IMG/VR virus record: IMGVR_UViG_3300024308_000188
Location: 150,527-214,526 of that record
Reading direction: 5' to 3' (one strand)
DNA: 64,000 nucleotides
In this document: in pieces, positions 1 through 29,549 of the stretch
Position numbering within the stretch: position 1 is the first letter of the stretch
How the letters are laid out: the number at the start of each line of letters is the position of its first letter
Program-made: the position numbers and the translations under genes
The notes under the pieces: generated by a model
Told to the model about the DNA's origin: nothing
Databases searched by the model: none
What the model saw: the letters and a program-made list of their open reading frames with translations, nothing else

Positions 1-357
1 AAAGAAAAGTTGGTTGATCTGAAAGGTTCTGGTACTGCCAAAACTGTAAATAAAACAGTGACTGGCAAAGCAAGTAAAAAGCAAGCGGTAGCGCAGTTCG
101 TTGCTCCATCCACAGAGTTACGAAAGGTTTATCGTGAAGCAGGTTTGAGCGAAACTAAAGATTCGTTCAAGGCGAATTTAGCCAAAGCTAAAGAATTCGG
201 CGTTGCATTATCAATGTTCAACAAGTCGATATTCGTAGATGATCAGGAACTTCTGGTTTACGGTGTTTCAGTGCGTGGTGGCGTTTGCCGCTTAATCTGT
301 AAAAATGCCAAAGGCAAGGATGTTCGCGTTGAGTCAGATACTGTAATCAGTTTCTAA
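1..357 (+). CDS. Hypothetical protein, 5'-truncated (basic region plus small beta-rich C-terminal domain)
   Basis: Frame is open from base 1 (KEKLVDLKGSG...) to TAA at 355-357; codon usage like neighbouring genes. Confidence 0.75.
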   Translation, partial: KEKLVDLKGSGTAKTVNKTVTGKASKKQAVAQFVAPSTELRKVYREAGLSETKDSFKANLAKAKEFGVALSMFNKSIFVDDQELLVYGVSVRGGVCRLICKNAKGKDVRVESDTVISF

Positions 358-382
358 CAAAAAGTTTGTTTGATTAATGTGT

Positions 383-398: not shown

Positions 399-405
399 GA
401 CCGTT

Positions 406-414
406 CTGTAAATA
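406..414 (+). promoter_or_regulatory. CTGTAAATA motif, candidate phage-sigma promoter element
   Basis: Same motif recurs in intergenic gaps at 5457, 6126, 23707, 27850. Confidence 0.5.
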
Positions 415-445
415 TTTATTTGAATCCAATGTAAGGAAAGTTGAA

Positions 446-5438: not shown

Positions 5439-5456
5439 GCTGCTGGTCTGCTAAAA

Positions 5457-5465
5457 CTGTAAATA
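5457..5465 (+). promoter_or_regulatory. CTGTAAATA motif followed by GGCAGGTC/GACCTGCC inverted repeat (5470-5505)
   Basis: Intergenic, upstream of ATG 5562. Confidence 0.5.
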
Positions 5466-5561
5466 CATAGGCAGGTCGGGAGGAATTTTAGAATTCTGAC
5501 CTGCCGATGATAATGTAATAACTGTCGCTTTTGACTAAAATCGCAAAGGAAATTTATAGCT

Positions 5562-6083: not shown

Positions 6084-6125
6084 TTCTTTTCAAGTATTCC
6101 CTTAGTTTAGTCTGCTTTGGGAATA

Positions 6126-6133
6126 CTGTAAAT
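6126..6133 (+). promoter_or_regulatory. CTGTAAAT motif overlapping the right arm of AGTATTCCC/GGGAATACT inverted repeat (6093-6127)
   Basis: Intergenic, upstream of ATG 6196. Confidence 0.45.
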
Positions 6134-6195
6134 TCTTTAGTATACCTAAATGGTATAAACAATTTTTTATAACAGTAGAACATTGGGAAAATATC

Positions 6196-10755: not shown

Positions 10756-11181
10756 ATGATTAAAAAACAAATTGTATTCATGTATATGGCTCAAGGTGTA
10801 GTCGAAGAAAGTTGTCGATGGATAAAAGCTGAACTTGAAGTCAACGACAATCCTAAAAAATTGTTGGAAACTCGATTGCAGTGTATGGCCTTAGCTATTG
10901 TGGATGCGAACGGATTTTTCATAAAACGCCCTCCACAAAATATTATTGGTAGCGTTTCCCGTGTTTACACTACAGGTCTTTATTGGTTGGGTAAGAATAG
11001 TAAATTCCTGACAGACACGTTGCTTAATGAATTGAGTGAAAAGAAAACTCTTTCAACATTAGGACTGGACTCTGTGAGAGCATATGTTTCTTATTTGAGT
11101 TCAAATAATCCGTATGATCAAGTTCAATTCACTTCATTCCTGAAAGAAGTGTTACCTAAAGGAACACCATCTTTAGTATGA
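10756..11181 (+). CDS. Hypothetical protein between topoisomerase subunit genes
   Basis: GAGGA SD; 141 aa. Confidence 0.7.
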   Translation: MIKKQIVFMYMAQGVVEESCRWIKAELEVNDNPKKLLETRLQCMALAIVDANGFFIKRPPQNIIGSVSRVYTTGLYWLGKNSKFLTDTLLNELSEKKTLSTLGLDSVRAYVSYLSSNNPYDQVQFTSFLKEVLPKGTPSLV

Positions 11182-11279
11182 ACTGATCCAAGTGTGTCAA
11201 AAATCAGGGGTTTATTTCAATACCTTATTTTGGTATAATCCGGCCTGTTCGCTTACACAAAAAGTTGGTAAACTAAACA

Positions 11280-12923
11280 ATGAAATCAAAAAAGCCGCCA
11301 GCAAAAACAAAGAAAGTTTCTAAGACTGAGTTGGGAGATATTAAACAACATAAAAAGTCGAAGAAAAATTTACCCGCAGTTGTTGAACCTAATCAATTCA
11401 AACTGCCTTCCACTGTACTGATGAAAACTATTGTCAAAGAAGATTTGGCAAACTTTGCAAAAAGAAATTTAACTCATTACGGTGAATACGTTGTACAAGA
11501 TCGTGCTGTTCCAGAATTCCGTGATGGATTAAAGCCAGTTCACCGCCACATTATTTATGCAATGTCTCAGCTGAATTTATTCGGTTCTGACTTTAAAAAG
11601 TGTGCGCGTATTGTTGGTGATACAATTGGTAAGTATCATCCTCACGGTGACTCTGCAACGTATGGTGCATTAGTTACGTTAGCCAATACAATTCCAAAAC
11701 TTATTCAAGGTCGAGGAAATTTTGGCAGTCCACTCGATATGGCGGCAGCTCAGCGTTATACTGAAGCGCGTTTGAGTGATTACAGCAAACTTTTTCTTTT
11801 GGATAAAGGTTATCTTGAAGTTGTTCCGCGTATAAACAACTTTGATGACAGCGAAAAAATTCCGTTGTATTTGCCTTCGCTTCTTCCAACAATGCTGTTG
11901 ATTGGAAATGCTGGTGGTATTGCCTACGGTGTTCGTGCTTGTAATCCTGCTTTTGAAATTGAAGGCGTTACAAAACTTATTCAAATTGTATTGGAAAAAG
12001 GCGATTTGAAATCTTCTGATTGTGTAAAGCATTTAAAAATTCAAGCTCCTTTTGGATCTGATTGCGTTAGCACACCAGAAGAACTTGCAAGCTTTATTGA
12101 AACAGGTAGAGCAAAGGCAATAAAATATTGTCCGAAAGTTCAAGTTGATTACAAAAATAAAATCGTTGAAATTGTTTCTTATTCTCCCGGTTTCGCATCT
12201 GAAGATGGCGTTGCTAAAAAACGTGATAAGATTTTAGAATTACCCGAAGTTAGTCGTTGGGTAAGTGACTGTGGTGATAAACGTCCGAACGCTGGCCCTT
12301 ATGGTGCATATTATTATGTTGTACCAAAACGTGGAATGTCAGATGACGGCCTTTTTGATTTAGCTGAAAAAATTCGTAAGATGTTGACTGGCAGTGAGTT
12401 CTATAACTTAGGACTTACAATAAACAACGTCGATGGAACTGCTAAATTCCTTTACTGTAACTTTGCGACCTATATTAAAAACTGGGTTCGCTATCGTGTG
12501 GAATTGGAAAAGCGTTATCTGGAAAACATTATTGCAAAACGCGAACGCGATTTGTGGGAATACAACGTATTGTCCTACGCTGTTATCAACAAGAATAAAA
12601 TCTTGGAAGTAATGAAAAAAGCTTTGGACAAAGATGATCCAGATACTTACACTGCAAAAACATTGAAGATTCCTCAAGATGAAGCTACTTTCATTTTGGA
12701 ATTGAAAATGCGTAGGCTGGCAAAACTTGAACTGAAAGCGCTACAGGACAAGATTAAAATTGCTACTGCCGACATTAAAGGATGGAAACGCGATCACAAA
12801 GATCCTAATCCTCGTATCGCTTCTTCCTTGACCGAATCTGTAAATAAGTATGTACGGATGGTAAATGCTTCAATCGCAGACACTAAAAAGTCTGAGAAGA
12901 AGCGCAAGAAAAAAGCAGACTGA
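11280..12923 (+). CDS. gyrA: Type IIA topoisomerase subunit A (GyrA/ParC breakage-reunion core, no C-terminal beta-pinwheel)
   Basis: [33 protein letters not shown], catalytic [11 protein letters not shown]; ends at 547 aa. Confidence 0.93.
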
Positions 12924-12945: not shown

Positions 12946-12968
12946 GAGGATTATAATTTATAATCCTC
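12946..12968. promoter_or_regulatory. 23-bp palindrome GAGGATTATAA-T-TTATAATCCTC containing two TATAAT boxes
   Basis: 11-bp arms, 1-nt centre, in the gap after gyrA. Confidence 0.55.
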
Positions 12969-13024: not shown

Positions 13025-14410
13025 ATGTCAGAAGTCCTTTACGCGACGGTACTTCAATCATTGATGTCGAGCATTAGCTCAACAGACAATTTGATTAAAA
13101 AGGCTGCAACACCTAAAAAGTTTGCTAAAGCTAGTGAAACACTGGCTGACCTATCATCTACTATAGATGCTTTAGCTGACTTCGATTCTAGCTCAAAGCG
13201 GGATCGTAAATTTACCGCACAGCGAAAACCTGCTCGGTATTTAGCTAACACTATACGTTCTTTAAAGGATGCGTTGGAAAATCGTGAGATTAATCTCACT
13301 AGATTTTGTGAATTGATCAGAACAGAAATGTCTGACAGATTGCAAGATCTAAAAGATTCTTCGCAGACCCATATAAAAAGGATCGAGCAAAATCCAGATC
13401 TTTTAATGGAAGTAAGTGACGACGAAGTTGGCCATGCCATTTTTGTTGAATCCTACAAAAAAGTTTCTGGTGCTTCAAAATCCAAGGCAGAACCTGTCGA
13501 GGAGTACGAAGAGATTGCCGATTTTTCTCAAGCTCAATATGAATTTGTGACAAACAGATTGGCTGTTCATAGTCAAGCTGTACACAAAGCATTAGTCAGC
13601 AAAATAAAATCTGATAAATTAAATTTCTCCAGAAGTGCTGTAATACCAACGCAGTGCCCTGTTACAGTTAACTTTGAAAATGTTGCTTTACGCAGCACAA
13701 AACTTTTACGTCACATATTTACTGGTGTCGATGCGCTTGGCTTTGCTGGCCCTGATAGCAGTGATGTTGCTTTAATTTTACCTAATCAAATTCTTTTGCA
13801 GTTTAGCAAAAGTCAAAGCGAATTGTTGATTGCTACAAAACACGACGATTCAAAGTTTGCCGATGCCGTAACAAAAAACAAGTCTGCAATGAAAGCGGAA
13901 AAAAGTTTGTTACGTAAACTTCTGACCGAACGTGAAAAACTAAATAACAGAAAAGAAGGGGCAAAGCGTACTGGAACTCTGGACTCTGAATTACGTAAAA
14001 AACTTGAAGCCGAACTGAAATCGGTTCAAGTTAAAATAGATACTTCTGAAAAGATGATCTCTATTTTGAAACGTCATGGAGTAGAAGCTAAAAGTATCTA
14101 TGATTCCAAGGCTCGATTCCTTGACAAGAAAACCTCAAATGTTTATTTTGAGCGCGTTAATCAATTTCTTGATGACGCTAGATCTCGCGGCCATGAATAT
14201 AGTTTAATGTCAAATGATTTTGCTACCAGTCCTACTAATAGCGATATTTCCTTGGCATGGATCGTACCAACAGCCGTCTATAAAAAGTTGTATGCTCAAA
14301 CAAAAGGCAATATCAAAGTTTTGTCATGGGGACTTCCACTTTCAAATAAAAGTTTAGGAGTTTCAAATGGAAAACAAACTGCCAGTGGTAAAAAGAGCCG
14401 ACGGCTGTGA
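13025..14410 (+). CDS. Hypothetical protein with a coiled-coil segment
   Basis: 461-aa ORF; heptad-rich EKSLLRKLLTEREKL...KKLEAELKSVQ. Confidence 0.8.
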   Translation: MSEVLYATVLQSLMSSISSTDNLIKKAATPKKFAKASETLADLSSTIDALADFDSSSKRDRKFTAQRKPARYLANTIRSLKDALENREINLTRFCELIRTEMSDRLQDLKDSSQTHIKRIEQNPDLLMEVSDDEVGHAIFVESYKKVSGASKSKAEPVEEYEEIADFSQAQYEFVTNRLAVHSQAVHKALVSKIKSDKLNFSRSAVIPTQCPVTVNFENVALRSTKLLRHIFTGVDALGFAGPDSSDVALILPNQILLQFSKSQSELLIATKHDDSKFADAVTKNKSAMKAEKSLLRKLLTEREKLNNRKEGAKRTGTLDSELRKKLEAELKSVQVKIDTSEKMISILKRHGVEAKSIYDSKARFLDKKTSNVYFERVNQFLDDARSRGHEYSLMSNDFATSPTNSDISLAWIVPTAVYKKLYAQTKGNIKVLSWGLPLSNKSLGVSNGKQTASGKKSRRL

Positions 14411-14918
14411 GTTATGTTGTATTTGTATGAATTGGTTTGCCAATATACATTGGCACCACACTATTCCAAGATCGTTAGGTGGTAGTGATAGTTTGCAAAT
14501 TCCTATCGATGGAGCTTGCCATACAACACTTCATGCTCATGCAGATGCTATAGTTGCACGTATTGGTGCTAAAAACCCAAAACCCTTAAGGAAATTTTGG
14601 GCTGACCCTGAGACAGAACTTAGAGCTAAAACTTGGTTAGAAATTTTGGTCAAGGCATTATTGAGTCCTCCAGTTTCTTCCAATGCTAAAATGACTTTAC
14701 TTCCTATGGTACATGCCGATCCAGCAACTCGGCAAGGATTAGAGTTACTCAAAAAAGATCTTCCGGGGATAACCAATATGGAGCAGACGATCTTATATTG
14801 TATCAATCACACGTTGAGATCCAAAGGATTAAAAAATGACAACAAAAAGACAGACATCAGTAAACAAAGCGCAGATAAAGATAAAAGTCATAACAGAAGA
14901 AAAACTAACTTGTGGTGA
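14367..14918 (+). CDS. HNH-like protein (degenerate motif)
   Basis: CELCCIC..WHHTIPRSLGGSDS..GACHTTLH matches the HHxxPxxxGG...CHxxxH pattern. Confidence 0.65.
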   Translation: MENKLPVVKRADGCELCCICMNWFANIHWHHTIPRSLGGSDSLQIPIDGACHTTLHAHADAIVARIGAKNPKPLRKFWADPETELRAKTWLEILVKALLSPPVSSNAKMTLLPMVHADPATRQGLELLKKDLPGITNMEQTILYCINHTLRSKGLKNDNKKTDISKQSADKDKSHNRRKTNLW

Positions 14919-15944: not shown

Positions 15945-17075
15945 ATGCAAATAGAGTCCAGATCTATAGTAAGCGTTTTTCAAAAAGTTTTGGGTGTTGA
16001 ATATGATACTCAGCAATGCAAAGATTTGTTTAATTATGTTGTTGAACACTTTTGTATGCAAACAAACATCGCGGATTTCCATAAAAAGATTTCCTCTGTT
16101 GTAAATTTTAATGATACGGAACTTTCTGCCAGCCAGTTTAGATTACTGCTTTCTGAAACAGGTTATGTTGTTTTGAATTTGCGTTACTATGCAACATTCT
16201 TGTCTGGTTATCGTGGTTTGAACAGTATGGTGGCCGAAGAAAACTATGCGCGATTTGATTTATGCCGTTGTGATGCTGTGCGAGTATTTCACGCAGTTAA
16301 AATACACAGAACGGCAATAAACAAATTTTTGGTTAAACGTAAGCAAACAAGCAAACTTTTTTGCCCAAGTGAATTTGAGCAGGTTCGTAATGGCTTTGCT
16401 CAGTATGCCGAGCCGATTCAACGCTTTATACGTTATAAGACTAAAAGCAAACTGAAATTTGTTTATCAGTCTAACAATATTGATAAGAAGGATTTTCACT
16501 CTGAACTTACTATAGCTGCTTTAAGAGCATACTATAAAAGACAGCCGTGCAATTTAAGTTATGACCACATGCTGAATTATTTAAGAGCCAGTGTTCGTAA
16601 TACAACTTGCAATCTTATCGATAAGTACACAACTGAAAAACGTCAAACACTTATTGGTGATGGTGAAGGAGCAGATCGTCGTTATCGGTTGAACGTAGAA
16701 GCTATGAGTCAAATAACTCCACGTTACAATGGTGACGGTGAAGAAATTTCAATCGAAGATCGTTTCGATGAATCTGCTCACACTAAATCTGGAAGTGATT
16801 TTGATTTCAGCGTAGATCGTATGCTTGATCGTTTACGCAACACCAAAAAAGGATTCATCCTTGCTGTTTATGTTGGACGGGAAGTAGCCAAGTTTACACA
16901 GTGGCTCCGTGAGAAAAGATACATTCGTACAGAAGATAAAAGTTGTCAAGATTTTTTAGCTGAGCGCGGTTTTGATGAAACTGCAAGTGTTGTAGCTAAA
17001 TTTATGGGATCTGATGTCGATTACGTTCATAAAAAACTACGGGAAGTTGCGTTAGAACTTGGCGTCATGAATTAG
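15945..17075 (+). CDS. Phage-encoded sigma70-family RNA polymerase sigma factor (divergent)
   Basis: Region-2-like IDKKDFHSELTIAALRAYYK...LNYLRASVRNTTCNLIDKY; region-4-like HTH TASVVAKFMGSDVDYVHKKLREVALEL. Confidence 0.65.
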   Translation: MQIESRSIVSVFQKVLGVEYDTQQCKDLFNYVVEHFCMQTNIADFHKKISSVVNFNDTELSASQFRLLLSETGYVVLNLRYYATFLSGYRGLNSMVAEENYARFDLCRCDAVRVFHAVKIHRTAINKFLVKRKQTSKLFCPSEFEQVRNGFAQYAEPIQRFIRYKTKSKLKFVYQSNNIDKKDFHSELTIAALRAYYKRQPCNLSYDHMLNYLRASVRNTTCNLIDKYTTEKRQTLIGDGEGADRRYRLNVEAMSQITPRYNGDGEEISIEDRFDESAHTKSGSDFDFSVDRMLDRLRNTKKGFILAVYVGREVAKFTQWLREKRYIRTEDKSCQDFLAERGFDETASVVAKFMGSDVDYVHKKLREVALELGVMN

Positions 17076-17534: not shown

Positions 17535-18902
17535 GTGTCTAAGAAATTGTTTTCGCCACTAGCGGAAATGACTTTGTTAAAGACGATAACCGACACTGAC
17601 GTTCCAGAAAAACAAAGAACAATGTTGCTTGCAAAAACTGATGCAAGTCTTTTTCATACACCTGCAACAAAGAAAGCTTTCTTGCGTGTGAAAAAATTGA
17701 CTGAAGCAAAGCAACGTGTTCCTGTTTGGGATGATATAGTTGATGATCCTACGTTCGATGCAAAAGTCCGAGAATTTTTAGCGGACTCAGATGCTAAGCC
17801 TGTAAAAAGTAAAATAAAGGCAAGGACTCTAATTGAGCGTTTAGATCGTTACCGCAAATTACGCGGTCTATTTGATATGGGAAAGGATATTATTTCCTAT
17901 TTCGATTTACAGGATTCTTTAGATCCTGAAGAACTTGCAGATAAGTTAGCGCTTCAACTAGCCAATAACCGTAAAGAGTTTGGAAAGCAACAAGAAATAC
18001 ACACGTTTGGTGTTGGTGGATCTATTCGTGCTTTGGTACGCAGAACTTTGCATAAACCAACAGAACGAATGTACAAAACTGGTTACGCAGATTACGATAG
18101 GCGTAATGGTGGATTGCCGACAACTGGAGTTATGTTACTTGCTGGTACAACGAGCGGTGGTAAATCCGTTCTCGCATCAAACTTGGAACATAATCTAACT
18201 TCTTTAAATTCTGGACTTTCAGCTATCAAGATAACTCTTGAAATGACGGCAGAGCAAGAAACCAACAGGGTTCTTTCAATGCTTACTGGAATTCCATTAT
18301 GGAAGTTCAAACAAAATAAGCTTACTAAACAGGAGAAGAAAAGAATAGAACGTGCTGCCTTAAAGCACGATAAGAAACTGAAAAAACTTGGCAGCAAATT
18401 TAGTTATTCGAGTCCTGATGGTTCAATGACGATAGATGATGTCATTAACATGGTCAAACCTTTTGGTTACAATGTTGTTATTCTCGACTACATTAGTTTG
18501 CTTGAAGGTGTTGACGATGATAACCAGTGGCGTATGCTAAGCGCTATTTGTCGTAAAGCAAAAGTTTATGCAACAGAATTCAAAGTGTTGTTTATAATTC
18601 TTGCTCAGTTAGATAGCGATAGTAACAATCTGAGATATTCTCGTGGTATGAAAGAACACGCTGACATTGTGTGGACTTGGAACTATAGTAAACCTGAAGT
18701 TCGTGCTACGAAGATATTACCAATCGATGTTGTTAAAGCGCGTGACGGTGAATTATTCCGTCTTGAGTTGCAAGAGACATTTGAAACAATGCGTGTTTCA
18801 AACTTACCCGGAGTTGCAGGTTCTCAATTTGGAGCAAGCGCTGCTGGCGGGTCTGACGTTGATGAAGATGATGAAGATGCTGGTCTTAATGCTTTATCGT
18901 AA
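17535..18902 (+). CDS. dnaB: DnaB-like replicative helicase
   Basis: Walker A AGTTSGGKS, TLEM, Walker B VVILDYISLL, LAQL, EHADIV, VKARDGE. Confidence 0.9.
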   Translation: MSKKLFSPLAEMTLLKTITDTDVPEKQRTMLLAKTDASLFHTPATKKAFLRVKKLTEAKQRVPVWDDIVDDPTFDAKVREFLADSDAKPVKSKIKARTLIERLDRYRKLRGLFDMGKDIISYFDLQDSLDPEELADKLALQLANNRKEFGKQQEIHTFGVGGSIRALVRRTLHKPTERMYKTGYADYDRRNGGLPTTGVMLLAGTTSGGKSVLASNLEHNLTSLNSGLSAIKITLEMTAEQETNRVLSMLTGIPLWKFKQNKLTKQEKKRIERAALKHDKKLKKLGSKFSYSSPDGSMTIDDVINMVKPFGYNVVILDYISLLEGVDDDNQWRMLSAICRKAKVYATEFKVLFIILAQLDSDSNNLRYSRGMKEHADIVWTWNYSKPEVRATKILPIDVVKARDGELFRLELQETFETMRVSNLPGVAGSQFGASAAGGSDVDEDDEDAGLNALS

Positions 18903-22717: not shown

Positions 22718-23401
22718 ATGTCAAATCAATATGTCTATAGTGCTAAGCAGCACTCAGACTTTCTGCAAAAACATAATGTACTTAAAGCCGCAAATTTTCT
22801 TGAGTTTGTCTCTGCCCCTCAGTTTTTAGGGCAATCTGTTATTTGGGAAAAGATGTCTACTGCAAGTGTAATGGACTACGCACACAAAATTACATTTTTT
22901 CAAAATAGTGTAATGGGTGATGTTAACTATTATGAAGCATTATTTTTATATGCGATACATACTCAAATAACAACACTCAATTTTCACGAACACAACGCAC
23001 AACCTAAACACCTTTATTTGTGTCGTACTGAACGTGCATATATGTTCAATCGATTCAAAGATATTTTCCGAGATAGTCCTTGGTTCTCAAATTTACTTAA
23101 ATCATTGGCTGAATACAATAGCAATTCTTTTAAAGCCCTAACAATTAAAGACTGTGACATGGAATTCTCTTTGTGTGGGAATTTAGTTATTCGATTTGTT
23201 GGAGCTATTAACACAGATAATGATCTAAGATTGATGCGCGGTAAATTCATTGTAGGTATTCTGAACTTCCAAAGTTCGCTATTTCCTAGTGTGAAATTGC
23301 CTTATGAAAAACCTCGCCTTATCTATGATAAGTTTTTGTCCGAAAATGTAGATCCTGCTGATTTGCCGTATTTGCCATACATAAACGCTTGTTTAGAATA
23401 A
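22718..23401 (+). CDS. Degenerate paralogue of the terminase ATPase N-terminal region (no Walker A)
   Basis: AANFLEFV..FL vs TerL AKNFLQFA..FL; FRDSPWFS vs INNSPWFK; DLRLMRGK vs DKRVLRGR. Confidence 0.6.
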   Translation: MSNQYVYSAKQHSDFLQKHNVLKAANFLEFVSAPQFLGQSVIWEKMSTASVMDYAHKITFFQNSVMGDVNYYEALFLYAIHTQITTLNFHEHNAQPKHLYLCRTERAYMFNRFKDIFRDSPWFSNLLKSLAEYNSNSFKALTIKDCDMEFSLCGNLVIRFVGAINTDNDLRLMRGKFIVGILNFQSSLFPSVKLPYEKPRLIYDKFLSENVDPADLPYLPYINACLE

Positions 23402-23457
23402 GTAGGGTACATGCTCTAATTCGATAATTTAAGGGTATAAACACAAGGAAACTGATC

Positions 23458-23694
23458 ATGAACCAAACTCAAAGAAAAAAGCCTTTAGATCCATTCGCAC
23501 TTGTTAAACAGCAAAAGCTTTCAAGTGAAAGTAGTGCGATTAAGAGTGAAAGTAGTGTAGATAACACTCGTGCTGGTGTGTGTCCAAAGTGTGGTGTTCC
23601 TATGGATATAGTTAAAGCTAACACACATAGCATGAGCACAGTGGATGCTTATATGTGCGCTCCATGTTGCGTGGTTACACCTATTCCTGCGTAA
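23458..23694 (+). CDS. Small zinc-ribbon protein
   Basis: GVCPKCG...CAPCC; AAGGA SD. Confidence 0.75.
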   Translation: MNQTQRKKPLDPFALVKQQKLSSESSAIKSESSVDNTRAGVCPKCGVPMDIVKANTHSMSTVDAYMCAPCCVVTPIPA

Positions 23695-23706
23695 CATCCA
23701 CTAAAT

Positions 23707-23715
23707 CTGTAAATA
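23707..23715 (+). promoter_or_regulatory. CTGTAAATA motif inside ATCTGTAA/TTACAGAT inverted repeat (23705-23726), upstream of portal
   Basis: Intergenic; motif recurrence. Confidence 0.55.
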
Positions 23716-23740
23716 CAATTACAGATATGGAGAATACATA

Positions 23741-25675
23741 ATGTTCAGTTTTAAGAAAACAATTCCTTCCACTTCTCGAAGTCGAGATCAAGAAGGGTTA
23801 GGTACGTCATCTAAAGATCGTGTTAGTGTTCGCAAAGCTGCTGAGGCAGAACAAAAGAAAACACGATCCGAACAACAAGGCTTCAGATCTGAAAGTAACG
23901 CTTCAGCTGGCGCACGTATGAGTAGTTTAGACGTAAACTTAGATACCTCTTTATTGTTAGAAGGTATGGACAGTGATTTAAAAGATCAGCAACTGTTCAG
24001 AGTTTATCGTGATATGTACTGGCACGATCCTGTTTGTGGATCTTGTGCAGATTTATACTCAACACTTCCTTTTTCTGAATTTAGTTTGGCCGGAGCTTCG
24101 GACAAATATTTAGATCAATACAGAGAAGTAGTTGAACTCTTGAATCTGCGTACAGCAATGCCTCGTATTAGTATTGACCATCAAGTTACTGGCGCATTCA
24201 CTGCAACTATTTTGTACAACAGCCAGAAAAAGCAATTCATTGATTTGATGTGTCACAAATATGAAAACCTTACCGTACACTCTTTGCCATTATTTGGTCA
24301 AGATCCAATAATGTACTTGCAGCTTGATGCTGATATGAAACGTACTTTGGGTTTGCCTTCAAAACGCATAGAGCAAATACGTCAAAGTCTTGGTATAGAA
24401 TTTTTTAACAAACTACTCAACGATCAAATTGAATTAGATCCAGTAGGTACTTTGTATGTTCCACGTAAAACTTTCTCTTATGGTGAAGGTGTTAGTTACT
24501 TTAAACGAGTGCTTCCACTTTGGTTGATTGAGAAAAATTTATATCGCGGAACACTGATTGAAAGTGGACGTAGACAACGAGCCATACTTCACTTAATGTT
24601 AGGTGAAGAAGGTTGGGAACCTACACCACAAGATTACGAACAAGCAACTGATTTATTTCTTGATGCTGATGCTGATCCTATAGGTGCTGTTGTCGCAACA
24701 CGTTTAGGTATTAGCGTTAGCGAGTTAAGACCAGGTGGTGACTTTTGGAAAGTTACTGACATTTGGGATCAAACAACTCCAGCAAAAATGAGAGCGCTTG
24801 GAATAAGTGAAGCTTTCTTGAGTGGTGACGCAAGTTATCAAACAATGGAAGGCTCAATGACTGTTTTCACTGAAACAATGAGAGCATATCGTGATATGCA
24901 AACTCGTTGCATTTTCTACGATAAAGTATTTCCGTTAGTTTCTATGATGCACGGTAATACAATTCGTAAAGGTAAGATTGTTAAACGTGAAGGCTTGATG
25001 TCTGGAACTACAGAAGAACGCTTACGTTTAATGCAAGATGGTTCAAAACTTTTAATTCCAAATGTACATTGGGCAAAAAGTTTAAAGCCTGAGCAAGATC
25101 AATCTTATATGGAAATTCTTGATCGTATGACTGCTGCTGGAATTCCAGTTCCAATACGAATGATGGCTGCTGCTGGTGGATTTAACTTGGATCAGCTGTT
25201 ATTAAATCAAGATGAAGATTTTGCTATTCAACGTCAACTTCTTGATTACAAAAAACGTGTTGCCGATATGACCGCTAAATATGCTGCTGCCGAAGGCGGT
25301 GGCGCTGAAGGCGGTGGCGGAGGAATGGGATCTTTCAGTTCTTCAAGTTCTGATCGTTATTTCAATCCAGATCGTTATCTCGATAAAGTAACTGCACAGC
25401 CACGGGGATTCAGTAATATTCTTGGAGGTGCTTCGCAAAATCTTTTACGTCACGATTTTGGTGAAGGAAGCGAGTTATATACTCACGATCATAGCGGTAA
25501 GAAAAAGCATGTATTTAATCAGACTGCGAAAAACAAGATGATCAATGCCAAAATTACAAAAGCCTTAGTTGCTATGAGTAAGAGTGGTAATGCACCATTG
25601 TTAACGCACGAAACAACGACAAATTTAAAGCCAACGCAAAGAGAAATGCAACGGCTTCTTGGAGTAGTTAAATGA
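23741..25675 (+). CDS. Portal protein (probable)
   Basis: Position after terL; 644 aa; YRDMYWHDPVCGSCAD, RALGISEAFLSG portal-like pattern. Confidence 0.7.
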   Translation: MFSFKKTIPSTSRSRDQEGLGTSSKDRVSVRKAAEAEQKKTRSEQQGFRSESNASAGARMSSLDVNLDTSLLLEGMDSDLKDQQLFRVYRDMYWHDPVCGSCADLYSTLPFSEFSLAGASDKYLDQYREVVELLNLRTAMPRISIDHQVTGAFTATILYNSQKKQFIDLMCHKYENLTVHSLPLFGQDPIMYLQLDADMKRTLGLPSKRIEQIRQSLGIEFFNKLLNDQIELDPVGTLYVPRKTFSYGEGVSYFKRVLPLWLIEKNLYRGTLIESGRRQRAILHLMLGEEGWEPTPQDYEQATDLFLDADADPIGAVVATRLGISVSELRPGGDFWKVTDIWDQTTPAKMRALGISEAFLSGDASYQTMEGSMTVFTETMRAYRDMQTRCIFYDKVFPLVSMMHGNTIRKGKIVKREGLMSGTTEERLRLMQDGSKLLIPNVHWAKSLKPEQDQSYMEILDRMTAAGIPVPIRMMAAAGGFNLDQLLLNQDEDFAIQRQLLDYKKRVADMTAKYAAAEGGGAEGGGGGMGSFSSSSSDRYFNPDRYLDKVTAQPRGFSNILGGASQNLLRHDFGEGSELYTHDHSGKKKHVFNQTAKNKMINAKITKALVAMSKSGNAPLLTHETTTNLKPTQREMQRLLGVVK

Positions 25676-26457
25676 AGTTAGTCCGTGACCTTTTTTATAA
25701 AGGAACTGCGGCAATATCTGACTGGCTTGTATTCCACCGATTCATTCGTCAGCCATTATCTTTCTTTGAGGATAATCTGAGGAAAGGAATTTTGTCTGAA
25801 GTAAAAGCAATTGAAGATATTCTCTTTGCTTTTACTTCAGAACATTCCGCTTGGTTTACAGACAGACACTTCAATCAATACGGTGCATTTATGTGCCGTG
25901 ATTTGATAAACAAAGAACTTTTCGATATAAATGATTATGTAGCTACGGATCTATATGATGCTGTGGCGCGGTCATCCATCAAAAGTAATTTTTCAGTTGA
26001 AGTGCAAAAGATGGTTGCTGAGCTTTCTAAGAAATTTTCAGAAGATCCTCGTTTCCAAAACACAACAACTGAAACTTATTTGAATTTATTTCACAGAACG
26101 CTACCTTTATTGTTTTTGAGATTTTTTGCACCAAAAGATTTGGTGAATTTCTCTAACAATTTCTTATATGCTATCGCAGCATTAGTAGCGTTTGATCGTA
26201 AAGGCTACTCAGAGTTTACCTCACCTGAAGCCATAAAAACAAAAACCTTTCTTGAGGATTTTTTGTTTGAAGTTGTCAACGATAGCTTTCACATATACAG
26301 CTACAATTTTTATATGGTTGTGCGTCGTATGTTTCCTGAAAGAATGTCTAACAGAATGGCAACCGTGCAATTCAAATTCAAATCCCTTCAAAGTGATAAT
26401 TACATATATGCGCCAAAACGCATGGTTAGTGATGTTGCCCTGTTCAGGAGAAAATGA
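25672..26457 (+). CDS. Hypothetical protein
   Basis: 261 aa; 4-nt overlap with portal end. Confidence 0.75.
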   Translation: MKLVRDLFYKGTAAISDWLVFHRFIRQPLSFFEDNLRKGILSEVKAIEDILFAFTSEHSAWFTDRHFNQYGAFMCRDLINKELFDINDYVATDLYDAVARSSIKSNFSVEVQKMVAELSKKFSEDPRFQNTTTETYLNLFHRTLPLLFLRFFAPKDLVNFSNNFLYAIAALVAFDRKGYSEFTSPEAIKTKTFLEDFLFEVVNDSFHIYSYNFYMVVRRMFPERMSNRMATVQFKFKSLQSDNYIYAPKRMVSDVALFRRK

Positions 26458-26837
26458 TGGAACTTTCTTGGTCAGAATTTCTGAAGAAATTTGAGGAAAA
26501 AGAATCTGGATCGAACATACGCTTGCTTATTCAAGATGTGAATTTACCTGCGTTTTGTGTTGGGATTATTTTTAGAAGCAATCAAGGAGTGCTAGAACCT
26601 ATTGTTAGATTCTTCACTACAAAAGACGCGACTGATGCACTACAAGCAAATGCCGAGAATCTCGTTTCTTTAAATTCGTGCTATGTAATTCCACACGTTC
26701 TTTACTATCCGGCTGGTTTGCTGGTTAATCGTGTAATGGCTTGGATGTCAGGATCTACAACTCTTGCTGGTGTTCCGTTTAATTCAATGCAATACAAAAC
26801 AACATTGACATACAGGGATCATAAACAAGATGAATAA
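26454..26837 (+). CDS. Hypothetical protein
   Basis: 127 aa; ATGA coupling; AGGAG SD. Confidence 0.75.
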   Translation: MMELSWSEFLKKFEEKESGSNIRLLIQDVNLPAFCVGIIFRSNQGVLEPIVRFFTTKDATDALQANAENLVSLNSCYVIPHVLYYPAGLLVNRVMAWMSGSTTLAGVPFNSMQYKTTLTYRDHKQDE

Positions 26838-27099
26838 TGAAGAGTTAAATGCCGCTTGGTCAGAACTTACAAAACAGCCTGTTAAAGCTTGGGCAGAAGA
26901 TCAGGTTAAACTTGATTTAAGCTTTATAACCGATCTTGAGTTGCAAGTTAAGATTGCAACAAGCTTTAGCGGATCTGTTTCTGAACAATTTTATAAGTTG
27001 CCTTCTAGTCAACAAGATGCTTACTTGTTTTATTTTATGATGGCAACCATACCGAACAAACTGCTTATGCAAGCAGTTTTATCTCAACTTAAAAAGTAA
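26830..27099 (+). CDS. Hypothetical protein
   Basis: 89 aa; overlapping start. Confidence 0.7.
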   Translation: MNNEELNAAWSELTKQPVKAWAEDQVKLDLSFITDLELQVKIATSFSGSVSEQFYKLPSSQQDAYLFYFMMATIPNKLLMQAVLSQLKK

Positions 27100-27107
27100 A
27101 GGAAGTA

Positions 27108-27485
27108 ATGATGGAAACTTTGTTTGATTTTTCTCAGGTTGATTTGAGTTCTGCCCCTGCACTGGTTATATTACCTGTTGGAAATTTCAATGGGGAAGAT
27201 CTGGAAACCTTAAAACGCTTTGAACAAGAGTACGATAAATACGTAAATCTTGGTGAGATCGTTAACTACGAAACAGCTGAAATTTTAGTGGATGCTTTTG
27301 GTGAATTTCAGGAAGAAAACGAATTGTATGTTGGTGACGAATCTTCAGCTGAAGAAGATGGTGTTGAAAACATTGCAATGATTTCAGGCGTTACGTTATT
27401 AGCGCTTGGTACTCGTCAAACCATTTTGATTACAATCATACCGTCCTTTGAAGATGCTGAATCTGAAGAAGATGACTTTGAATAA
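27108..27485 (+). CDS. Small acidic hypothetical protein
   Basis: AAGGA SD; D/E-rich; ends DDFE like 7010-7477 (DFDFE). Confidence 0.75.
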   Translation: MMETLFDFSQVDLSSAPALVILPVGNFNGEDLETLKRFEQEYDKYVNLGEIVNYETAEILVDAFGEFQEENELYVGDESSAEEDGVENIAMISGVTLLALGTRQTILITIIPSFEDAESEEDDFE

Positions 27486-27499
27486 CAGTTAACCCAAGG

Positions 27500-27526
27500 A
27501 AGGGCGGCCCAGTGTCGCCCTTTTTT
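27500..27526 (+). terminator. Rho-independent terminator
   Basis: AAGGGCG...CGCCCTT stem followed by T6. Confidence 0.8.
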
Positions 27527-27541
27527 ATTAGGAATTTCATT

Positions 27542-27844
27542 ATGAATATTCAACTTGTACATTCCTCAGTTTTAACCGTTAATCATTTTGTACGCAATCA
27601 AATGGCAGGAGAACTTACTGTTGTTTTATGTGATACAAGCGATACACTAGAAGCCCAGCGCTATATGGAAACCTTCAAAAAGAAAGTCCAACAGGTAATG
27701 CCGCTTATGGTTCCAGATAAGTTAAGTTGCTACTGCTATACAAATGGCCGCCTTAATTGCAGAAAGCTACACAGGAATCTTTCTACCTTTATTCAAAATC
27801 ATCCAGACCAGAAATTAATTAATCAACGAGCCGAGTGGCATTAG
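27542..27844 (+). CDS. Hypothetical protein
   Basis: ATG 27542 follows AGGAA; 27512 lies within the terminator. Confidence 0.65.
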   Translation: MNIQLVHSSVLTVNHFVRNQMAGELTVVLCDTSDTLEAQRYMETFKKKVQQVMPLMVPDKLSCYCYTNGRLNCRKLHRNLSTFIQNHPDQKLINQRAEWH

Positions 27845-27849
27845 TAAAA

Positions 27850-27857
27850 CTGTAAAT
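27850..27857 (+). promoter_or_regulatory. CTGTAAAT motif
   Basis: Intergenic, before AGGAG SD and ATG 27883. Confidence 0.45.
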
Positions 27858-27882
27858 CTTTCTTTAGTAACAGGAGAGATTT

Positions 27883-28584
27883 ATGATATGCACTTTATAT
27901 TCGTGTGGTTGCAGTAACACAGCTAAAAAGCAAGGGCCAGATTTCTGTGACATACATGGAAGGCAGTATATAATCAGAGGCAGCTGGCCGAATCCTTTAA
28001 AGAAAAGAAAGTTTGTGCGCGATAAGTATTCTGTTTATTTATGTGCTAATCCAGAAGATGTGCCGTTCAAACCTGTGATAACAGATCTTGTTGTCATAAA
28101 CAATATGTATGACTTAACAGTCGAAAACATAAAGCATTTCTTTGGTGGAAATAAAGTTCTTTGTTTGCTCTTAGAAAACATGAAAGCAGAATCTGACATA
28201 AGATCTTTTATTTTTGCTGGCGTCCCTATGAACATGGGTACTGTAGGAAAAAGTTTCCAGTTTGTGGACATACATACAGTAGAAAATGGATCTATTATTT
28301 CAGAATACAAAACGCTTTCTGGAATACTCGCTCCGAAAAAGCTTGAAGAATTTGCTGAGTGTCATCGCAGCGTTGGTTGCTTTTTTGAAAAGTGGCTTAT
28401 TACACAAGTTAAGCCAAAACGAGTTGTTCACGTAAATGCTAAATCTTTACGTTGGTTAAAAGCAGCTAAAGAAACTGAAACTCCTTACACAGCGCAAACT
28501 GTAAATCCATTAGTATACAATCTAATGGTCGATTCGGATAAATTGGAAAGAATTCAATTATCCGAACATGGGATAATCAAATGA
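27883..28584 (+). CDS. Hypothetical protein with N-terminal Cys/His finger; possible degenerate N4/N6 DNA methyltransferase fold
   Basis: CTLYSCGC..FCDIH; TDLVVINNMY where DLIITDPPY is expected (fold call weak). Confidence 0.65.
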   Translation: MICTLYSCGCSNTAKKQGPDFCDIHGRQYIIRGSWPNPLKKRKFVRDKYSVYLCANPEDVPFKPVITDLVVINNMYDLTVENIKHFFGGNKVLCLLLENMKAESDIRSFIFAGVPMNMGTVGKSFQFVDIHTVENGSIISEYKTLSGILAPKKLEEFAECHRSVGCFFEKWLITQVKPKRVVHVNAKSLRWLKAAKETETPYTAQTVNPLVYNLMVDSDKLERIQLSEHGIIK

Positions 28585-29549
28585 ATAAAATCAAACCTAA
28601 TCCGGTTATAGATATTATTGACGGCCACAACTGGCTTAATCGAGCATATTACTCCAGTTTAAAGAACAAGGGAATGACGTTAAAGGACGGAACACCTACC
28701 GGAGCAGCTAAAACTTTTTGCGTTATGCTAAATGCTCTTATTCGCAGAAGATTAGCGTCACGAGGTCAAGTTATTTTAGCTGTTGTATTTGACCACAAAA
28801 AAGGTTCGGACAAGCGCAAGAAAATAATGCGCGATTTCATGGAAAAGCGTTTACGCGGAGAAGATGCTGCTAAATTTCCAGAAAAATATTTAAGTGGTTA
28901 TAAAGGTAATCGTTTTTCTGACGGTGACGATGCTAAAAGTATTGCACTTCGCCCACAATTAAAAATGATTATTGATATTTTGACTGCGCGTGGAATTCAC
29001 CCTATAACTTCTGTTCACGGTGAGGCCGACGATATTATAGGAAGCTTGTGTTTCCAACTAAAATGTCGTAAATATATTTGGAGTCGTGACGGTGATTTCG
29101 CTCAGTTATTAAAACCTGATACAAGGTTACGTTTACCAAAACAAGACAACAGTGAAGAACAAGATATTACATATCAAAGTTGTCTTGAAAAGTATGGCGT
29201 TATTCCTCCAATGTTTGTGGATCTTTTGGCACTGACAGGAGATCAGAGCGATAACATTCCAGGCATTCCAGGCGTCGGAGATAAAACAGCTATCGAATTG
29301 TTGATGCAGTATGAAGATCTTGATTCTATATTCCAAGCAGAACATAAAGGCGCTTTGGGAAAAAAACTCAAAGATCCATTTTATCAAGATCTTTGTTTTA
29401 TGTGCAGAGATTTAGTTGAGATCAAGAAAGACTTAAAGGTAGATACACGATTATCGACCTATCTGTTGGAACCTTGGTCTAAAAAAGTCGAACGAAAAGT
29501 TCGTTCTGTAGAAAAACAGTTTGAGTTCAAAGAAACATTCAACTGTTAG
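28581..29549 (+). CDS. 5'-3' exonuclease / flap endonuclease (PolA N-terminal-like)
   Basis: IIDGHN, VVFD, YKGNR, EADDIIG, SRDGDFAQL, LTGDQSDNIPGIPGVGDKTA. Confidence 0.93.
   Translation: MNKIKPNPVIDIIDGHNWLNRAYYSSLKNKGMTLKDGTPTGAAKTFCVMLNALIRRRLASRGQVILAVVFDHKKGSDKRKKIMRDFMEKRLRGEDAAKFPEKYLSGYKGNRFSDGDDAKSIALRPQLKMIIDILTARGIHPITSVHGEADDIIGSLCFQLKCRKYIWSRDGDFAQLLKPDTRLRLPKQDNSEEQDITYQSCLEKYGVIPPMFVDLLALTGDQSDNIPGIPGVGDKTAIELLMQYEDLDSIFQAEHKGALGKKLKDPFYQDLCFMCRDLVEIKKDLKVDTRLSTYLLEPWSKKVERKVRSVEKQFEFKETFNC

What the first reader, a model, noticed from the sequence alone, without database searches (positions are those of the whole stretch)
15945..17075. Divergent phage sigma factor with a long N-terminal extension, and its candidate promoter CTGTAAAT(A)
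Seen: sigma region-2-like and region-4-like segments after ~150 unexplained residues. CTGTAAAT(A) occurs on + in five short intergenic gaps (406, 5457, 6126, 23707, 27850), 25-100 nt before starts. It also occurs near gene ends at 12838 and 28499 (upstream of 13025 and the exonuclease) and at 44. My rough expectation is about two per strand by chance, and intergenic DNA is a small fraction. It resembles the T4 late -10 element TATAAATA in its TAAATA core. Several copies overlap or abut inverted repeats. I found no copy in the minus-strand intergenic gaps.
Basis: partly seen in the sequence, partly recalled or inferred. Interest (0 to 1): 0.6.

Follow-up and report, generated by a model that had tools for sequence, protein, structure and literature searches.

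The report
Sigma-like jumbo-phage protein; conserved middle promoter
The gene encodes a very divergent relative of bacterial sigma factors that is a core gene of a large group of giant phages lacking their own RNA polymerase, and CTGTAAAT is a real promoter of their DNA-replication genes, conserved across the group, but nothing yet shows that this protein is the one that reads it.

Summary
Both observations hold. The link between them is unproven.

**The protein.** The ORF at 15945-17075 (376 aa) is the ortholog of Pseudomonas phage PaBG gp112. It has no Pfam or PDB sequence match. A confident AlphaFold model (pLDDT 93.8) shows:
- a sigma-2-like bundle (aa ~146-235) and an acidic linker;
- a sigma-4-like helix-turn-helix domain (aa ~286-376);
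- a family-specific helical N-domain (aa 1-145) with no recognisable relative.

Sigma factors dominate the structural matches, but only at Z 6-8.

**The genome.** The complete genome (319.5 kb) encodes no RNA polymerase. It carries two sequence-recognisable sigma factors elsewhere.

**The motif.** The functional form is AAACTGTAAAT-N6-GTA.
- It is the top non-ribosome-site 8-mer upstream of genes.
- It runs in gene direction on both strands.
- It precedes the replication genes, the gp118-like sigma gene and the portal gene.
- It is enriched in nine other jumbo phages tested; PaBG itself shows only the looser AAACTGTMAA form.
- The Lu11 GenBank record (genome paper 2012) already annotates it as "putative middle/late promoter".
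- PaBG gp112 was called a possible sigma factor in 2020.

It may be this protein, the better-conserved gp118-like sigma, or host sigma-70 with a helper. The data do not decide.

The parts
15945..17075 (+). ORF of 376 aa, ortholog of PaBG gp112 (phrog_19229); a sigma-70-family-like protein
   Evidence: The family has 449 representatives at 50% clustering, nearly all 350-390 aa. AF2 model pLDDT 93.8.
15945..16379 (+). N-terminal all-alpha domain (aa 1-145). It is conserved in the family and has no recognisable relative.
   Evidence: Folded alone: pLDDT 89.9, pTM 0.85. Best VIA Z 5.8 (COMMD HN domain, rmsd 4.2 over 110 aa); Foldseek E >= 0.75. ESM features found nothing. R66 and D110 are nearly invariant.
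16380..16649 (+). Sigma-2-like helical bundle (aa ~146-235), the most conserved block of the family
   Evidence: VIA: E. coli sigma70 1sig_A Z 8.0, rmsd 2.7 over 72 aa; RpoE 5uxx_C Z 7.6, rmsd 2.2 over 68 aa; also sigK, SigW, SigE and AR9 nvRNAP holoenzyme chain 7s01_A. Conservation 2.0-2.2 bits per column. K169, F172, P201, N211 and N223 are nearly invariant.
16650..16799 (+). Acidic linker with a short beta-hairpin (aa ~236-285), lower model confidence
   Evidence: pLDDT 59-87; strands 236-239 and 246-249. The sequence is rich in D/E. That it corresponds to the sigma-3.2 / ECF linker is an inference.
16800..17072 (+). Sigma-4-like helix-turn-helix domain (aa ~286-376)
   Evidence: VIA: S. 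aureus sigmaA domain 4, 4g6d_A, Z 6.1, rmsd 2.3 over 60 aa. Two-domain alignments to sigH, sigL, sigE, sigS and sig32 span model residues 150-376. G311, F317 and L321 are nearly invariant.
403..426 (+). CTGTAAAT promoter-like site (core 406-413), 40 nt before ATG 446
   Evidence: 13.2 bits. It follows a G+C hairpin.
5454..5477 (+). CTGTAAAT promoter-like site (core 5457-5464), 105 nt before the start at 5562
   Evidence: 23.1 bits.
6123..6146 (+). CTGTAAAT promoter-like site (core 6126-6133), 70 nt before the start at 6196
   Evidence: 20.8 bits.
12835..12858 (+). CTGTAAAT site (core 12838-12845) in the last codons of the topoisomerase II subunit gene. It is the nearest motif copy upstream of the operon that holds the ORF.
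   Evidence: 17.5 bits. The position is conserved in G001, Dickeya AD1, Yersinia fHe-Yen9-02, Erwinia 2910A and NCTB.
23704..23727 (+). CTGTAAAT site (core 23707-23714), 34 nt before the portal gene
   Evidence: 17.5 bits. Conserved before the portal gene of G001.
27847..27870 (+). CTGTAAAT site (core 27850-27857), 33 nt before the start at 27883
   Evidence: 20.6 bits.
28496..28519 (+). CTGTAAAT site (core 28499-28506), 82 nt before the exonuclease gene (28581)
   Evidence: 26.6 bits, the best in the window.
41..64 (+). CTGTAAAT copy (core 44-51) with good flanks but inside a gene, about 400 nt from the next start. Its status is uncertain.
   Evidence: 22.0 bits.
11180..11239 (+). Early, host-sigma70-type promoter module before the topoisomerase II subunit gene: AACTGATCcaaGTGTGTCAAAAA, about 26 nt, then TGGTATAAT. 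It lies 4.7 kb upstream of the ORF in the same transcription direction.
23424..23431 (+). ATAATTTA, the second (late-like) phage promoter class, before a 78-aa gene just upstream of the portal promoter

Best explanation
The window comes from a jumbo phage. Its complete relative is 319.5 kb. It belongs to the PaBG / Lu11 / Alexandravirus kind, group 2.2 of Iyer et al. 2021. It has no RNA polymerase of its own and reprograms the host core enzyme.

**The protein.** The ORF is the ortholog of PaBG gp112, a fast-evolving core gene always placed between a topoisomerase gene and the DnaB-type helicase gene. The protein is a sigma-70-family derivative. It has a sigma-2-like bundle, an acidic linker and a sigma-4-like helix-turn-helix domain, behind a clade-specific 145-residue helical domain of unknown role. 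Most likely it binds host core RNA polymerase and directs it to one class of phage promoters.

**The motif.** AAACTGTAAAT-N6-GTA is the middle-class promoter of the replication and recombination regulon. It is a single -10-like element that differs from the T4 late promoter TATAAATA at one position. The transcript start is inferred about 7 nt downstream, at the conserved GTA.

**The programme.** Three promoter classes are visible:
- early: a host sigma-70 extended -10 with a conserved upstream module;
- middle: CTGTAAAT;
- late-like: ATAATTTA.

Two phage sigma-like proteins are conserved, gp118-like and gp112-like. Which of them reads which class is not resolved.

**Shown:** the anatomy, fold, conservation and gene sets. 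**Inferred:** polymerase binding, the start site, the temporal classes and any pairing.
For: **Protein**
- No Pfam hit; PHROG of unknown function.
- 449 family representatives.
- AF2 model pLDDT 93.8.
- In an unbiased search of 48,161 chains, about 20 of the top 50 are sigma factors. Sigma-2 matches have rmsd 2.2-2.8 A over 68-77 residues, and sigma-4 matches 2.3 A over 60.
- Nearly all of Foldseek's top chains are sigma factors aligned over residues 150-376.
- ESM-feature neighbours are viral Sigma70_r2, r4 and ECF clusters, at score 0.95 with 174 shared features.
- 2 of 124 members touch Pfam Sigma70_r2.
- The most conserved block is the sigma-2-like one.
- Published HHpred for PaBG gp112: 97% to sigma factors (PMC7412058).

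**Genome**
- No RNAP beta or beta-prime domain hit in G000 and no beta-prime or T7-type hit in the complete relatives; the T7-type search rang in no control genome, so it is uninformative.
- Group 2 jumbo phages are described as using sigma factors instead (PMC7824862).

**Motif**
- Enrichment and orientation.
- Conserved flanks only at gene-upstream copies.
- It precedes the clamp loader, SbcC, DNA polymerase, helicase, exonuclease, SSB, primase, sigma and portal genes.
- Positions are conserved between genomes whose flanking DNA differs.
- Enriched against the reversed-pattern control in Yersinia, Dickeya, Erwinia, Pseudomonas (Lu11, Peetri), Xanthomonas and Vibrio phages. The looser AAACTGTMAA form is enriched in PaBG, NCTB and Lu11.
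- The Lu11 record annotates exactly these 16-mers as promoters.
Against: - Sequence-profile tests for sigma homology fail here: Pfam found nothing at E <= 1, a PDB profile search found nothing, and hhalign against FliA and gp118-like profiles gave probabilities of 0.3-1.3%.
- Structural Z-scores of 6-8 are in the range where helical bundles can match by chance (tool notes). ORC, MCM and Sld7 helical or winged-helix hits sit at similar Z.
- The invariant position among replication genes would also suit a replication protein.
- No transcript start is mapped. The only public runs that hold the phage are contigs of wastewater libraries, which carry no 5'-end information.
Confidence: 0.6

Rival explanations
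1. One reading: this gp112-like protein is the sigma that reads AAACTGTAAAT and so switches on the replication (middle) genes. The gp118-like sigma, itself made from a CTGTAAAT promoter, then reads the late promoters.
For: - The gp118-like sigma gene has CTGTAAAT 39-47 nt upstream in G000/G002, G001, Dickeya AD1 and Yersinia fHe-Yen9-02. In a cascade this marks it as a product of the middle class rather than its reader.
- In G000/G002 an early host-type promoter lies 4.7 kb upstream of the ORF in the same operon.
- The gp118-like protein keeps the canonical region-2.3 aromatic motif (SYIxWW). That motif suits a TAnnnT -10 such as the TAATTT inside ATAATTTA.
Against: - The ORF itself lies about 3 kb downstream of a position-conserved CTGTAAAT copy in every genome checked. 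The early promoter upstream is not conserved in G001.
- The protein is only 23-30% identical across phages that keep the identical 11-nt motif, which is fast evolution for an unchanged specificity.
- No direct evidence exists.
Confidence: 0.3
2. The reverse pairing: the well-conserved gp118-like sigma reads AAACTGTAAAT, including its own promoter (positive autoregulation primed by weak host recognition). The fast-evolving gp112-like protein serves the late class, whose motif also changes between phages, or acts as a co-factor there.
For: - Rates match. The gp118-like sigma is 42-46% identical between this phage and the Erwinia, Dickeya, Yersinia and PaBG phages. CTGTAAAT is kept in the first three of these and in Lu11; in PaBG only the looser AAACTGTMAA form is enriched, 7 against 0.
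- The gp112-like protein is 23-27% identical, and ATAATTTA is not kept in those phages.
- TGTAAAT can be read as TG plus TAAAT, close to an extended -10.
- gp118-like has only region 2 by Pfam, as expected for a reader of a -10-only promoter such as T4 gp55.
- Autoregulated alternative sigmas are common (general knowledge).
Against: It needs a priming source for the first sigma molecules. Both genes sit behind CTGTAAAT, so the argument from gene position does not discriminate. The rate matching is a correlation over few clades.
Confidence: 0.3
3. Neither phage sigma reads the motif. Host sigma-70 holoenzyme, redirected by an unidentified early phage protein (as T4 MotA/AsiA do at middle promoters), uses AAACTGTAAAT as an activator box or unusual -10. 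Both phage sigma-like proteins act later.
For: - Both sigma-like genes lie behind CTGTAAAT copies, so an early factor is logically needed to start the class.
- The motif is conserved across phages of hosts that share a nearly identical sigma-70.
- A weak TA-rich element follows the motif at 6-7 nt in many copies.
Against: - No AsiA homolog in G001 or G002.
- The downstream element lacks the T at its sixth position that sigma-70 requires (inspection).
- The conserved flank information stops at GTA.
Confidence: 0.2
4. The protein is not a transcription factor. It is a replication accessory protein (helicase loader or origin-binding protein) built from a helical bundle and a winged-helix-like domain, and its sigma resemblance is convergent or too remote to matter.
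For: - Invariant synteny between the topoisomerase and DnaB-helicase genes in PaBG, NCTB, and the Yersinia, Dickeya and Erwinia phages.
- ORC/Cdc6, MCM, CMG and Sld7 chains appear at Z 6-7.8.
- No significant sequence-profile link to sigma families in my tests.
Against: - Sigma chains of all groups dominate both structural lists, with the two domains in sigma order.
- Language-model neighbours are sigma clusters.
- Published HHpred gives 97%.
- The replication hits cover one domain only.
Confidence: 0.15

Closest known systems
Pseudomonas phage PaBG gp112 (YP_008433444.1) and its family, phrog_19229
   Same: An ortholog: 27% identity over 97% of the length, with the same neighbours (topoisomerase, small ORF, DnaB helicase, terminase, portal). 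Evseev et al. 2020 called it a possible sigma factor on HHpred 97.2%, E 0.2.
   Different: Nothing essential. Every record seen annotates it as a hypothetical protein. No experiment exists.
ECF (group 4) sigma factors, e.g. M. tuberculosis SigH/SigL and E. coli RpoE
   Same: A two-domain sigma-2 plus sigma-4 architecture joined by an acidic linker, with no sigma-3. These are the best two-domain structural matches (5zx2_F Z 8.1; 6dv9_F; 6jbq_F).
   Different: It has a 145-residue N-terminal domain that ECF sigmas lack and a longer linker with a beta-hairpin. It does not reach the Pfam Sigma70_r2, r4 or ECF thresholds.
PaBG gp118-type phage sigma (phrog_17569), encoded in this genome at G000 116501-117520, outside the window
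   Same: It is a phage sigma with a roughly 160-residue N-terminal extension before region 2. It is a core gene of the same clade and always co-occurs with the ORF's family.
   Different: gp118-type is recognisable by sequence (Pfam Sigma70_r2 27.6 bits) and evolves about half as fast. Profile comparison with the ORF's family is not significant.
T4 late transcription: gp55 and the late promoter TATAAATA
   Same: A single -10-like element without a -35. TGTAAAT(A) differs from TATAAATA at one position. The phage sigma works on host core polymerase.
   Different: The motif here drives replication genes, not virion genes. It has extra conserved AAAC upstream and GTA downstream. gp55 lacks a sigma-4 domain. 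Sequence similarity to gp55 was not tested.
Lu11 'putative middle/late promoter' features (GenBank JQ768459.1; Adriaenssens et al. 2012)
   Same: The identical motif. The annotated 16-mers begin with CTGTAAAT and end in GTA, for example CTGTAAATGGTGAGTA.
   Different: Those are computational annotations in one phage. No factor was assigned. The genome paper was not readable here.
phiKZ gp68 / AR9 gp226, the promoter-specificity subunits of jumbo-phage non-virion RNA polymerases
   Same: A sigma-2-like bundle. The 463-residue AR9 nvRNAP holoenzyme chain 7s01_A matches residues 151-234 at Z 6.3. That this chain is gp226 is my recollection, not shown by the tool.
   Different: Those proteins are subunits of phage-encoded multisubunit polymerases. 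This genome and its relatives gave no beta or beta-prime domain hit.

Membership tests
Sigma-70 family | Sequence match to region 2 (Pfam PF04542) at family threshold | tested here: not met
   No Pfam family at E <= 1 for this protein. Only 2 of 124 family members touch PF04542, best E 0.0043. hhalign against FliA and gp118-like profiles gave probabilities <= 1.3%. Published HHpred for the PaBG ortholog gave 97%.
Sigma-70 family | Sigma-2 domain fold | tested here: met
   Residues 150-234 superpose on sigma-2 of sigma70, RpoE, SigW, SigE and sigK at Z 6.5-8.0, rmsd 2.2-2.8 A over 68-77 residues. The Z range calls for caution.
Sigma-70 family | Sigma-4 helix-turn-helix domain C-terminal to sigma-2 | tested here: met
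   Residues 286-374 match S. aureus sigmaA domain 4 (Z 6.1, rmsd 2.3 A over 60 residues). Two-domain alignments in sigma order cover many sigma chains. No Pfam r4 hit.
Sigma-70 family | Binds core RNA polymerase (beta-prime clamp helices, beta flap) | not testable with these tools
Sigma-70 family | Confers promoter-specific initiation | not testable with these tools
   Needs in vitro transcription or 5'-end mapping. The public runs are contigs only.
Promoter-specificity subunit of a jumbo-phage multisubunit RNAP (phiKZ gp68 / AR9 gp226 kind) | Phage encodes beta and beta-prime-like subunits | tested here: not met
   PF00623 and PF00562 found nothing in G000. PF00623 found nothing in the complete genomes G002, G001 and G003, while all 14 controls rang.
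Lu11-type middle/late promoter | CTGTAAAT followed about 5-6 nt later by GTA, upstream of genes in sense orientation | tested here: met
T4-type late promoter | TATAAATA centred at -10, drives virion genes, needs gp55/gp33/clamp | tested here: inconclusive
   The core differs at one base. The gene set here is replication, not virion. The start site and factors are unknown.

The most novel reading that the evidence does not exclude
The gp112-like family is a distinct, previously uncharacterised branch of sigma-70-family factors, universal in the polymerase-less jumbo phages. Its unique N-terminal domain docks on the phage replisome (its gene neighbours: topoisomerase, DnaB helicase). That would couple one promoter class to ongoing replication, a new solution to the problem T4 solves with the sliding clamp. 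It would work in a fixed two-sigma relay with the gp118-like factor.
Probability: 0.12. Interest if true: 0.7.

Novelty: new member of a known kind. Interest (0 to 1): 0.4.

Why it matters
Jumbo phages of this kind infect Pseudomonas, Erwinia, Dickeya, Yersinia, Xanthomonas, Vibrio and Burkholderia. Their transcription programme has never been studied at the bench.

This analysis gives a concrete, testable map:
- three promoter classes;
- one promoter class (AAACTGTAAAT) enriched in nine of the ten other phages tested, with a looser form in PaBG;
- two conserved phage sigma-like proteins, one of which is invisible to standard annotation.

If the gp112-like protein is a working sigma, it extends the known sequence space of the family, and its extra domain needs explaining.

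Tried and rejected
It gives no verdict either way.
2. RNA evidence: the only runs holding the phage are four small wastewater 'RNA-Seq' libraries kept as contigs. They show presence at 95-99% identity but no starts or strands.
3. Sequence-profile links to sigma factors were not significant: PDB phmmer/hmmsearch, Pfam, and hhalign against FliA and gp118-like alignments. The weakly aligned stretches do fall on region 2 and region 4.2.
4. The FliA-like third sigma as reader of the motif: rejected, because G001 keeps the motif and lacks that gene. No FliA-type promoter set was found in the phage.
5. Phyletic profiles cannot separate the two sigma-like genes. They co-occur in every phage tested.
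6. Hairpins after the motif as a defining feature: not enriched.
7. An AsiA-type appropriator: none found.
8. The search for related loci with the wide alignment and with two distant members returned nothing usable.
9. The N-terminal domain folded alone found no convincing fold relative.
10. The Lu11 genome paper is not held in the library.
Full report
**What the window is.** The window is G000:C1:150527-214526 of a 214.5-kb IMG/VR phage contig with 38% G+C. That contig is 97-99% identical to a complete 319.5-kb record with terminal repeats, here G002. A second complete relative, G001 (286.6 kb), carries an ortholog of the ORF at 53% identity.

Protein searches place the phage with PaBG, NCTB, Lu11 and the Erwinia, Dickeya and Yersinia jumbo phages. 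Iyer et al. 2021 put PaBG, Lu11 and NCTB in their subgroup 2.2. They describe group 2 as having no RNA polymerase but encoding sigma factors (PMC7824862).

I confirmed the lack of a polymerase. No beta-prime or beta domain hit appeared in G000, and no beta-prime hit appeared in G002, G001 or a more distant relative G003, while all 14 control genomes rang. A T7-type polymerase search also found nothing, but it rang in no control, so it is uninformative.

**The ORF.** ATG 15945 to stop 17075 gives 376 aa. Pfam finds nothing at E <= 1. PHROGs places it in phrog_19229, of unknown function.

The exhaustive profile search found 449 cluster representatives, nearly all 350-390 aa and matching end to end. 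The N-terminal 'extension' is therefore an integral, conserved part of the family.

The PaBG ortholog is gp112. Evseev et al. 2020 wrote that gene 112 possibly encodes a sigma factor (HHpred probability 97.2%, E 0.2). They also found that gene 118 is a clear sigma factor (PMC7412058).

Synteny is strict in PaBG, NCTB, Yersinia fHe-Yen9-02, Dickeya AD1 and Erwinia 2910A. The order is topoisomerase II subunit, one or two ORFs, a small topoisomerase-like gene, this gene, a small ORF and the DnaB-type helicase; where the fetched stretch reaches further (PaBG, Yersinia fHe-Yen9-02) the terminase follows, and in PaBG the portal too. The window has the same order.

**Fold.** With a 124-sequence alignment, AlphaFold2 gives pLDDT 93.8. 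The model has nine helices up to residue 150, a helical bundle at 152-229, a short beta-hairpin and an acidic, less confident linker at 236-285, and five helices at 270-372.

- The search of 48,161 representative chains that does not lean on Foldseek lists sigma factors in about 20 of the top 50 rows. Sigma-2 matches: E. coli sigma70 Z 8.0, rmsd 2.7 A over 72 residues; RpoE Z 7.6, 2.2 A over 68; plus sigK, SigW, SigE, SigR, SigK and CnrH. Sigma-4 match: S. aureus sigmaA domain 4, Z 6.1, 2.3 A over 60. Two-domain matches in sigma order: SigH Z 8.1, sigB, sig32, SigL, AlgU, sigS and WhiG.
- Foldseek's own best chains are T. thermophilus sigmaA, though at E about 0.3 because the domain arrangement differs. 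Realigning Foldseek's top 671 chains gives a list that is almost entirely sigma factors over residues 150-376.
- The tool warns that Z below 8-13 can be common for helical proteins. Unrelated bundles and ORC, MCM and Sld7 chains do sit at Z 6-7.8.
- Independent support comes from the protein-language-model search. The nearest named clusters are viral Sigma70_r2, Sigma70_r4 and ECF-sigma clusters, at score 0.95 with 174 shared features.
- Family conservation peaks in the sigma-2-like block at residues 161-240, as it does in true sigma factors.
- Against this, my profile-profile comparisons with a FliA alignment and a gp118-like alignment were not significant. The weakly aligned stretches do fall on region 2.1-2.2 and region 4.2.

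I put the chance that this is a sigma-70-family derivative at about 0.8, and that it acts as a working sigma at about 0.6.

**The N-terminal domain.** Folded alone from seven sequences, it gives pLDDT 89.9 and pTM 0.85. It finds no convincing relative. The best VIA match is Z 5.8 to the COMMD helical N-domain, with Foldseek E >= 0.75. The language-model search of residues 1-145 found nothing. Some whole-model alignments to group-1 sigmas reach back to residue 76, but this is weak. The domain remains unexplained.

**Other sigma factors.** The genome has two sequence-recognisable sigma genes outside the window.
- One is a 339-aa gp118-like protein at G000 116501-117520. It has Pfam region 2 only, belongs to phrog_17569 'RNA polymerase sigma factor', and has a 160-residue N-terminal extension.
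- The other is a 226-aa FliA-like protein with regions 2, 3 and 4. It is closest to gammaproteobacterial FliA at 36-38% identity. It is absent from G001.

The gp118-like gene and the ORF's family co-occur in every phage tested, including Xanthomonas, Vibrio, Burkholderia, Achromobacter and P. putida phages.

**The motif.** Two more copies are chance-level: 45609 on +, and 17905-17912 on -.
- Across G000, G002 and G001 about half of all copies lie within 130 nt upstream of a start, in sense. That zone is 8% of the sequence space (P = 2e-9 to 3e-15).
- CTGTAAAT is the top non-ribosome-site 8-mer upstream of genes in both G002 and G001.
- Gene-upstream copies share AAA before, C or A after, and GTA at six nucleotides downstream. 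Copies elsewhere carry no flank information.
- Many copies follow a terminator-like hairpin and T-run.
- Downstream genes are the clamp loader, SbcC-like nuclease, DNA polymerase, helicase, exonuclease, SSB, primase, the gp118-like sigma and the portal. This is a replication or 'middle' regulon.
- Positions are conserved between G002 and G001 before the sigma, SSB-like and portal genes, and at the end of the topoisomerase II gene.

The motif is also enriched in other phages. Counts are given against the reversed-pattern control.

| Phage | Motif copies | Control |
|---|---|---|
| Yersinia fHe-Yen9-02 | 32 | 5 |
| Dickeya AD1 | 35 | 1 |
| Erwinia 2910A | 33 | 1 |
| Lu11 | 48 | 6 |
| Xanthomonas PhiXhv-15 | 18 | 4 |
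| Vibrio GR7B | 14 | 3 |
| Pseudomonas vB_PpuM-Peetri | 10 | 1 |
| Burkholderia BcepSauron | 6 | 2 |
| Achromobacter Motura | 5 | 1 |

As AAACTGTMAA it is enriched in PaBG (7 against 0) and NCTB (17 against 0).

The Lu11 GenBank record annotates exactly these sites, for example CTGTAAATGGTGAGTA, as 'putative middle/late promoter'. The motif is real, and it has already been predicted in a relative.

If the last T of the motif is at -7, the conserved G of GTA is +1. TGTAAAT(A) then aligns with the T4 late promoter TATAAATA with one change. This geometry is an inference.

**Other promoter classes.**
- Early promoters are a conserved 55-nt module: AACTGATCnaaGTGTGTCAAAAA, about 26 nt, then TGnTATAAT. 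It is present in both G001 and G002. One copy lies in the window at 11180-11239.
- ATAATTTA precedes the tail sheath gene and other, probably virion, genes. It is shared by G001 and G002 but not by the Erwinia, Dickeya or Yersinia phages.

**Which factor reads CTGTAAAT?**
- The FliA-like sigma is excluded, because G001 keeps the motif without it.
- For the ORF: the gp118-like gene sits directly behind a CTGTAAAT copy in four lineages, which in a cascade makes it a product of that class. In G000/G002 an early promoter heads the operon that contains the ORF.
- Against the ORF: it also lies 3 kb behind a position-conserved CTGTAAAT, and the early promoter is not conserved in G001. The ORF's family evolves about twice as fast as gp118-like (23-27% against 42-46% identity to the same phages), while the motif stays identical.
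- The late motif does change between clades, which would suit a fast-evolving reader.
- A host sigma-70 plus early-factor mechanism also remains possible, although no AsiA homolog exists.

**Limits.** No transcript ends could be obtained. All temporal labels are inferred from gene content.

Noticed in passing
L009:1480-2160 (G000 132307-132987, outside the window): A complete FliA-type sigma factor (regions 2, 3 and 4) sits in the early region of this phage. It is 36-38% identical to FliA of Marinobacter, Shewanella and Aliidiomarina. It is present in G000/G002 and absent from the relative G001. No FliA-type promoter set was found in the phage genome, so it may act on host genes.
   Followed up: partly
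window 11180-11239; also nine further copies in G000 at 127-150 kb, and copies in G001 and G002: Early promoters are a strikingly conserved composite of about 55 nt: AACTGATCnaaGTGTGTCAAAAA, a variable spacer of about 26 nt that is often a hairpin, then an extended -10 TGnTATAAT. The upstream block sits too far from the -10 to be a -35. It looks like an UP element or a factor site.
   Followed up: partly
whole contig (G000) against G002: The contig holding the window is a fragment. A 319.5-kb IMG/VR record with a 127-bp terminal repeat is 97-99% identical and contains about 105 kb that G000 lacks.
   Followed up: yes
window 23424-23431 and 23707-23714: A late-like ATAATTTA, a 78-aa gene and then a CTGTAAAT copy stand in tandem before the portal gene. 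The same arrangement is kept in G001, so the portal may be served by two promoter classes.
   Followed up: partly
window 377-446: The longest ORF starts at 377, but ATG 446 has a good ribosome site (AAGGAAAG). It leaves the CTGTAAAT copy at 406 intergenic, so 446 is the likelier start.
   Followed up: partly
window 12946-12968: A perfect 10-bp-stem hairpin (GAGGATTATAAATTATAATCCTC on the minus strand) lies between the topoisomerase II gene and the next gene. It contains an ATAATTTA on the + strand. Whether it is a terminator, an operator or a late promoter is unclear.
   Followed up: no
window 14367-14918: A 183-aa ORF with a Cys/His pattern resembling an HNH nuclease overlaps both neighbours. 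It has no Pfam or PHROG hit. An ORF of similar size stands at this place in the Yersinia, Dickeya and NCTB phages; its homology to this one was not tested.
   Followed up: no
window 23300-29000: Four small wastewater libraries of one study hold this phage or close strains at 95-99% identity, one as a single contig across the whole stretch. This suggests a wastewater host.
   Followed up: partly
window 41-64: A CTGTAAAT copy with full promoter-like flanks (22 bits) lies inside a gene about 400 nt from the next start. It could be an internal promoter or a chance copy.
   Followed up: no
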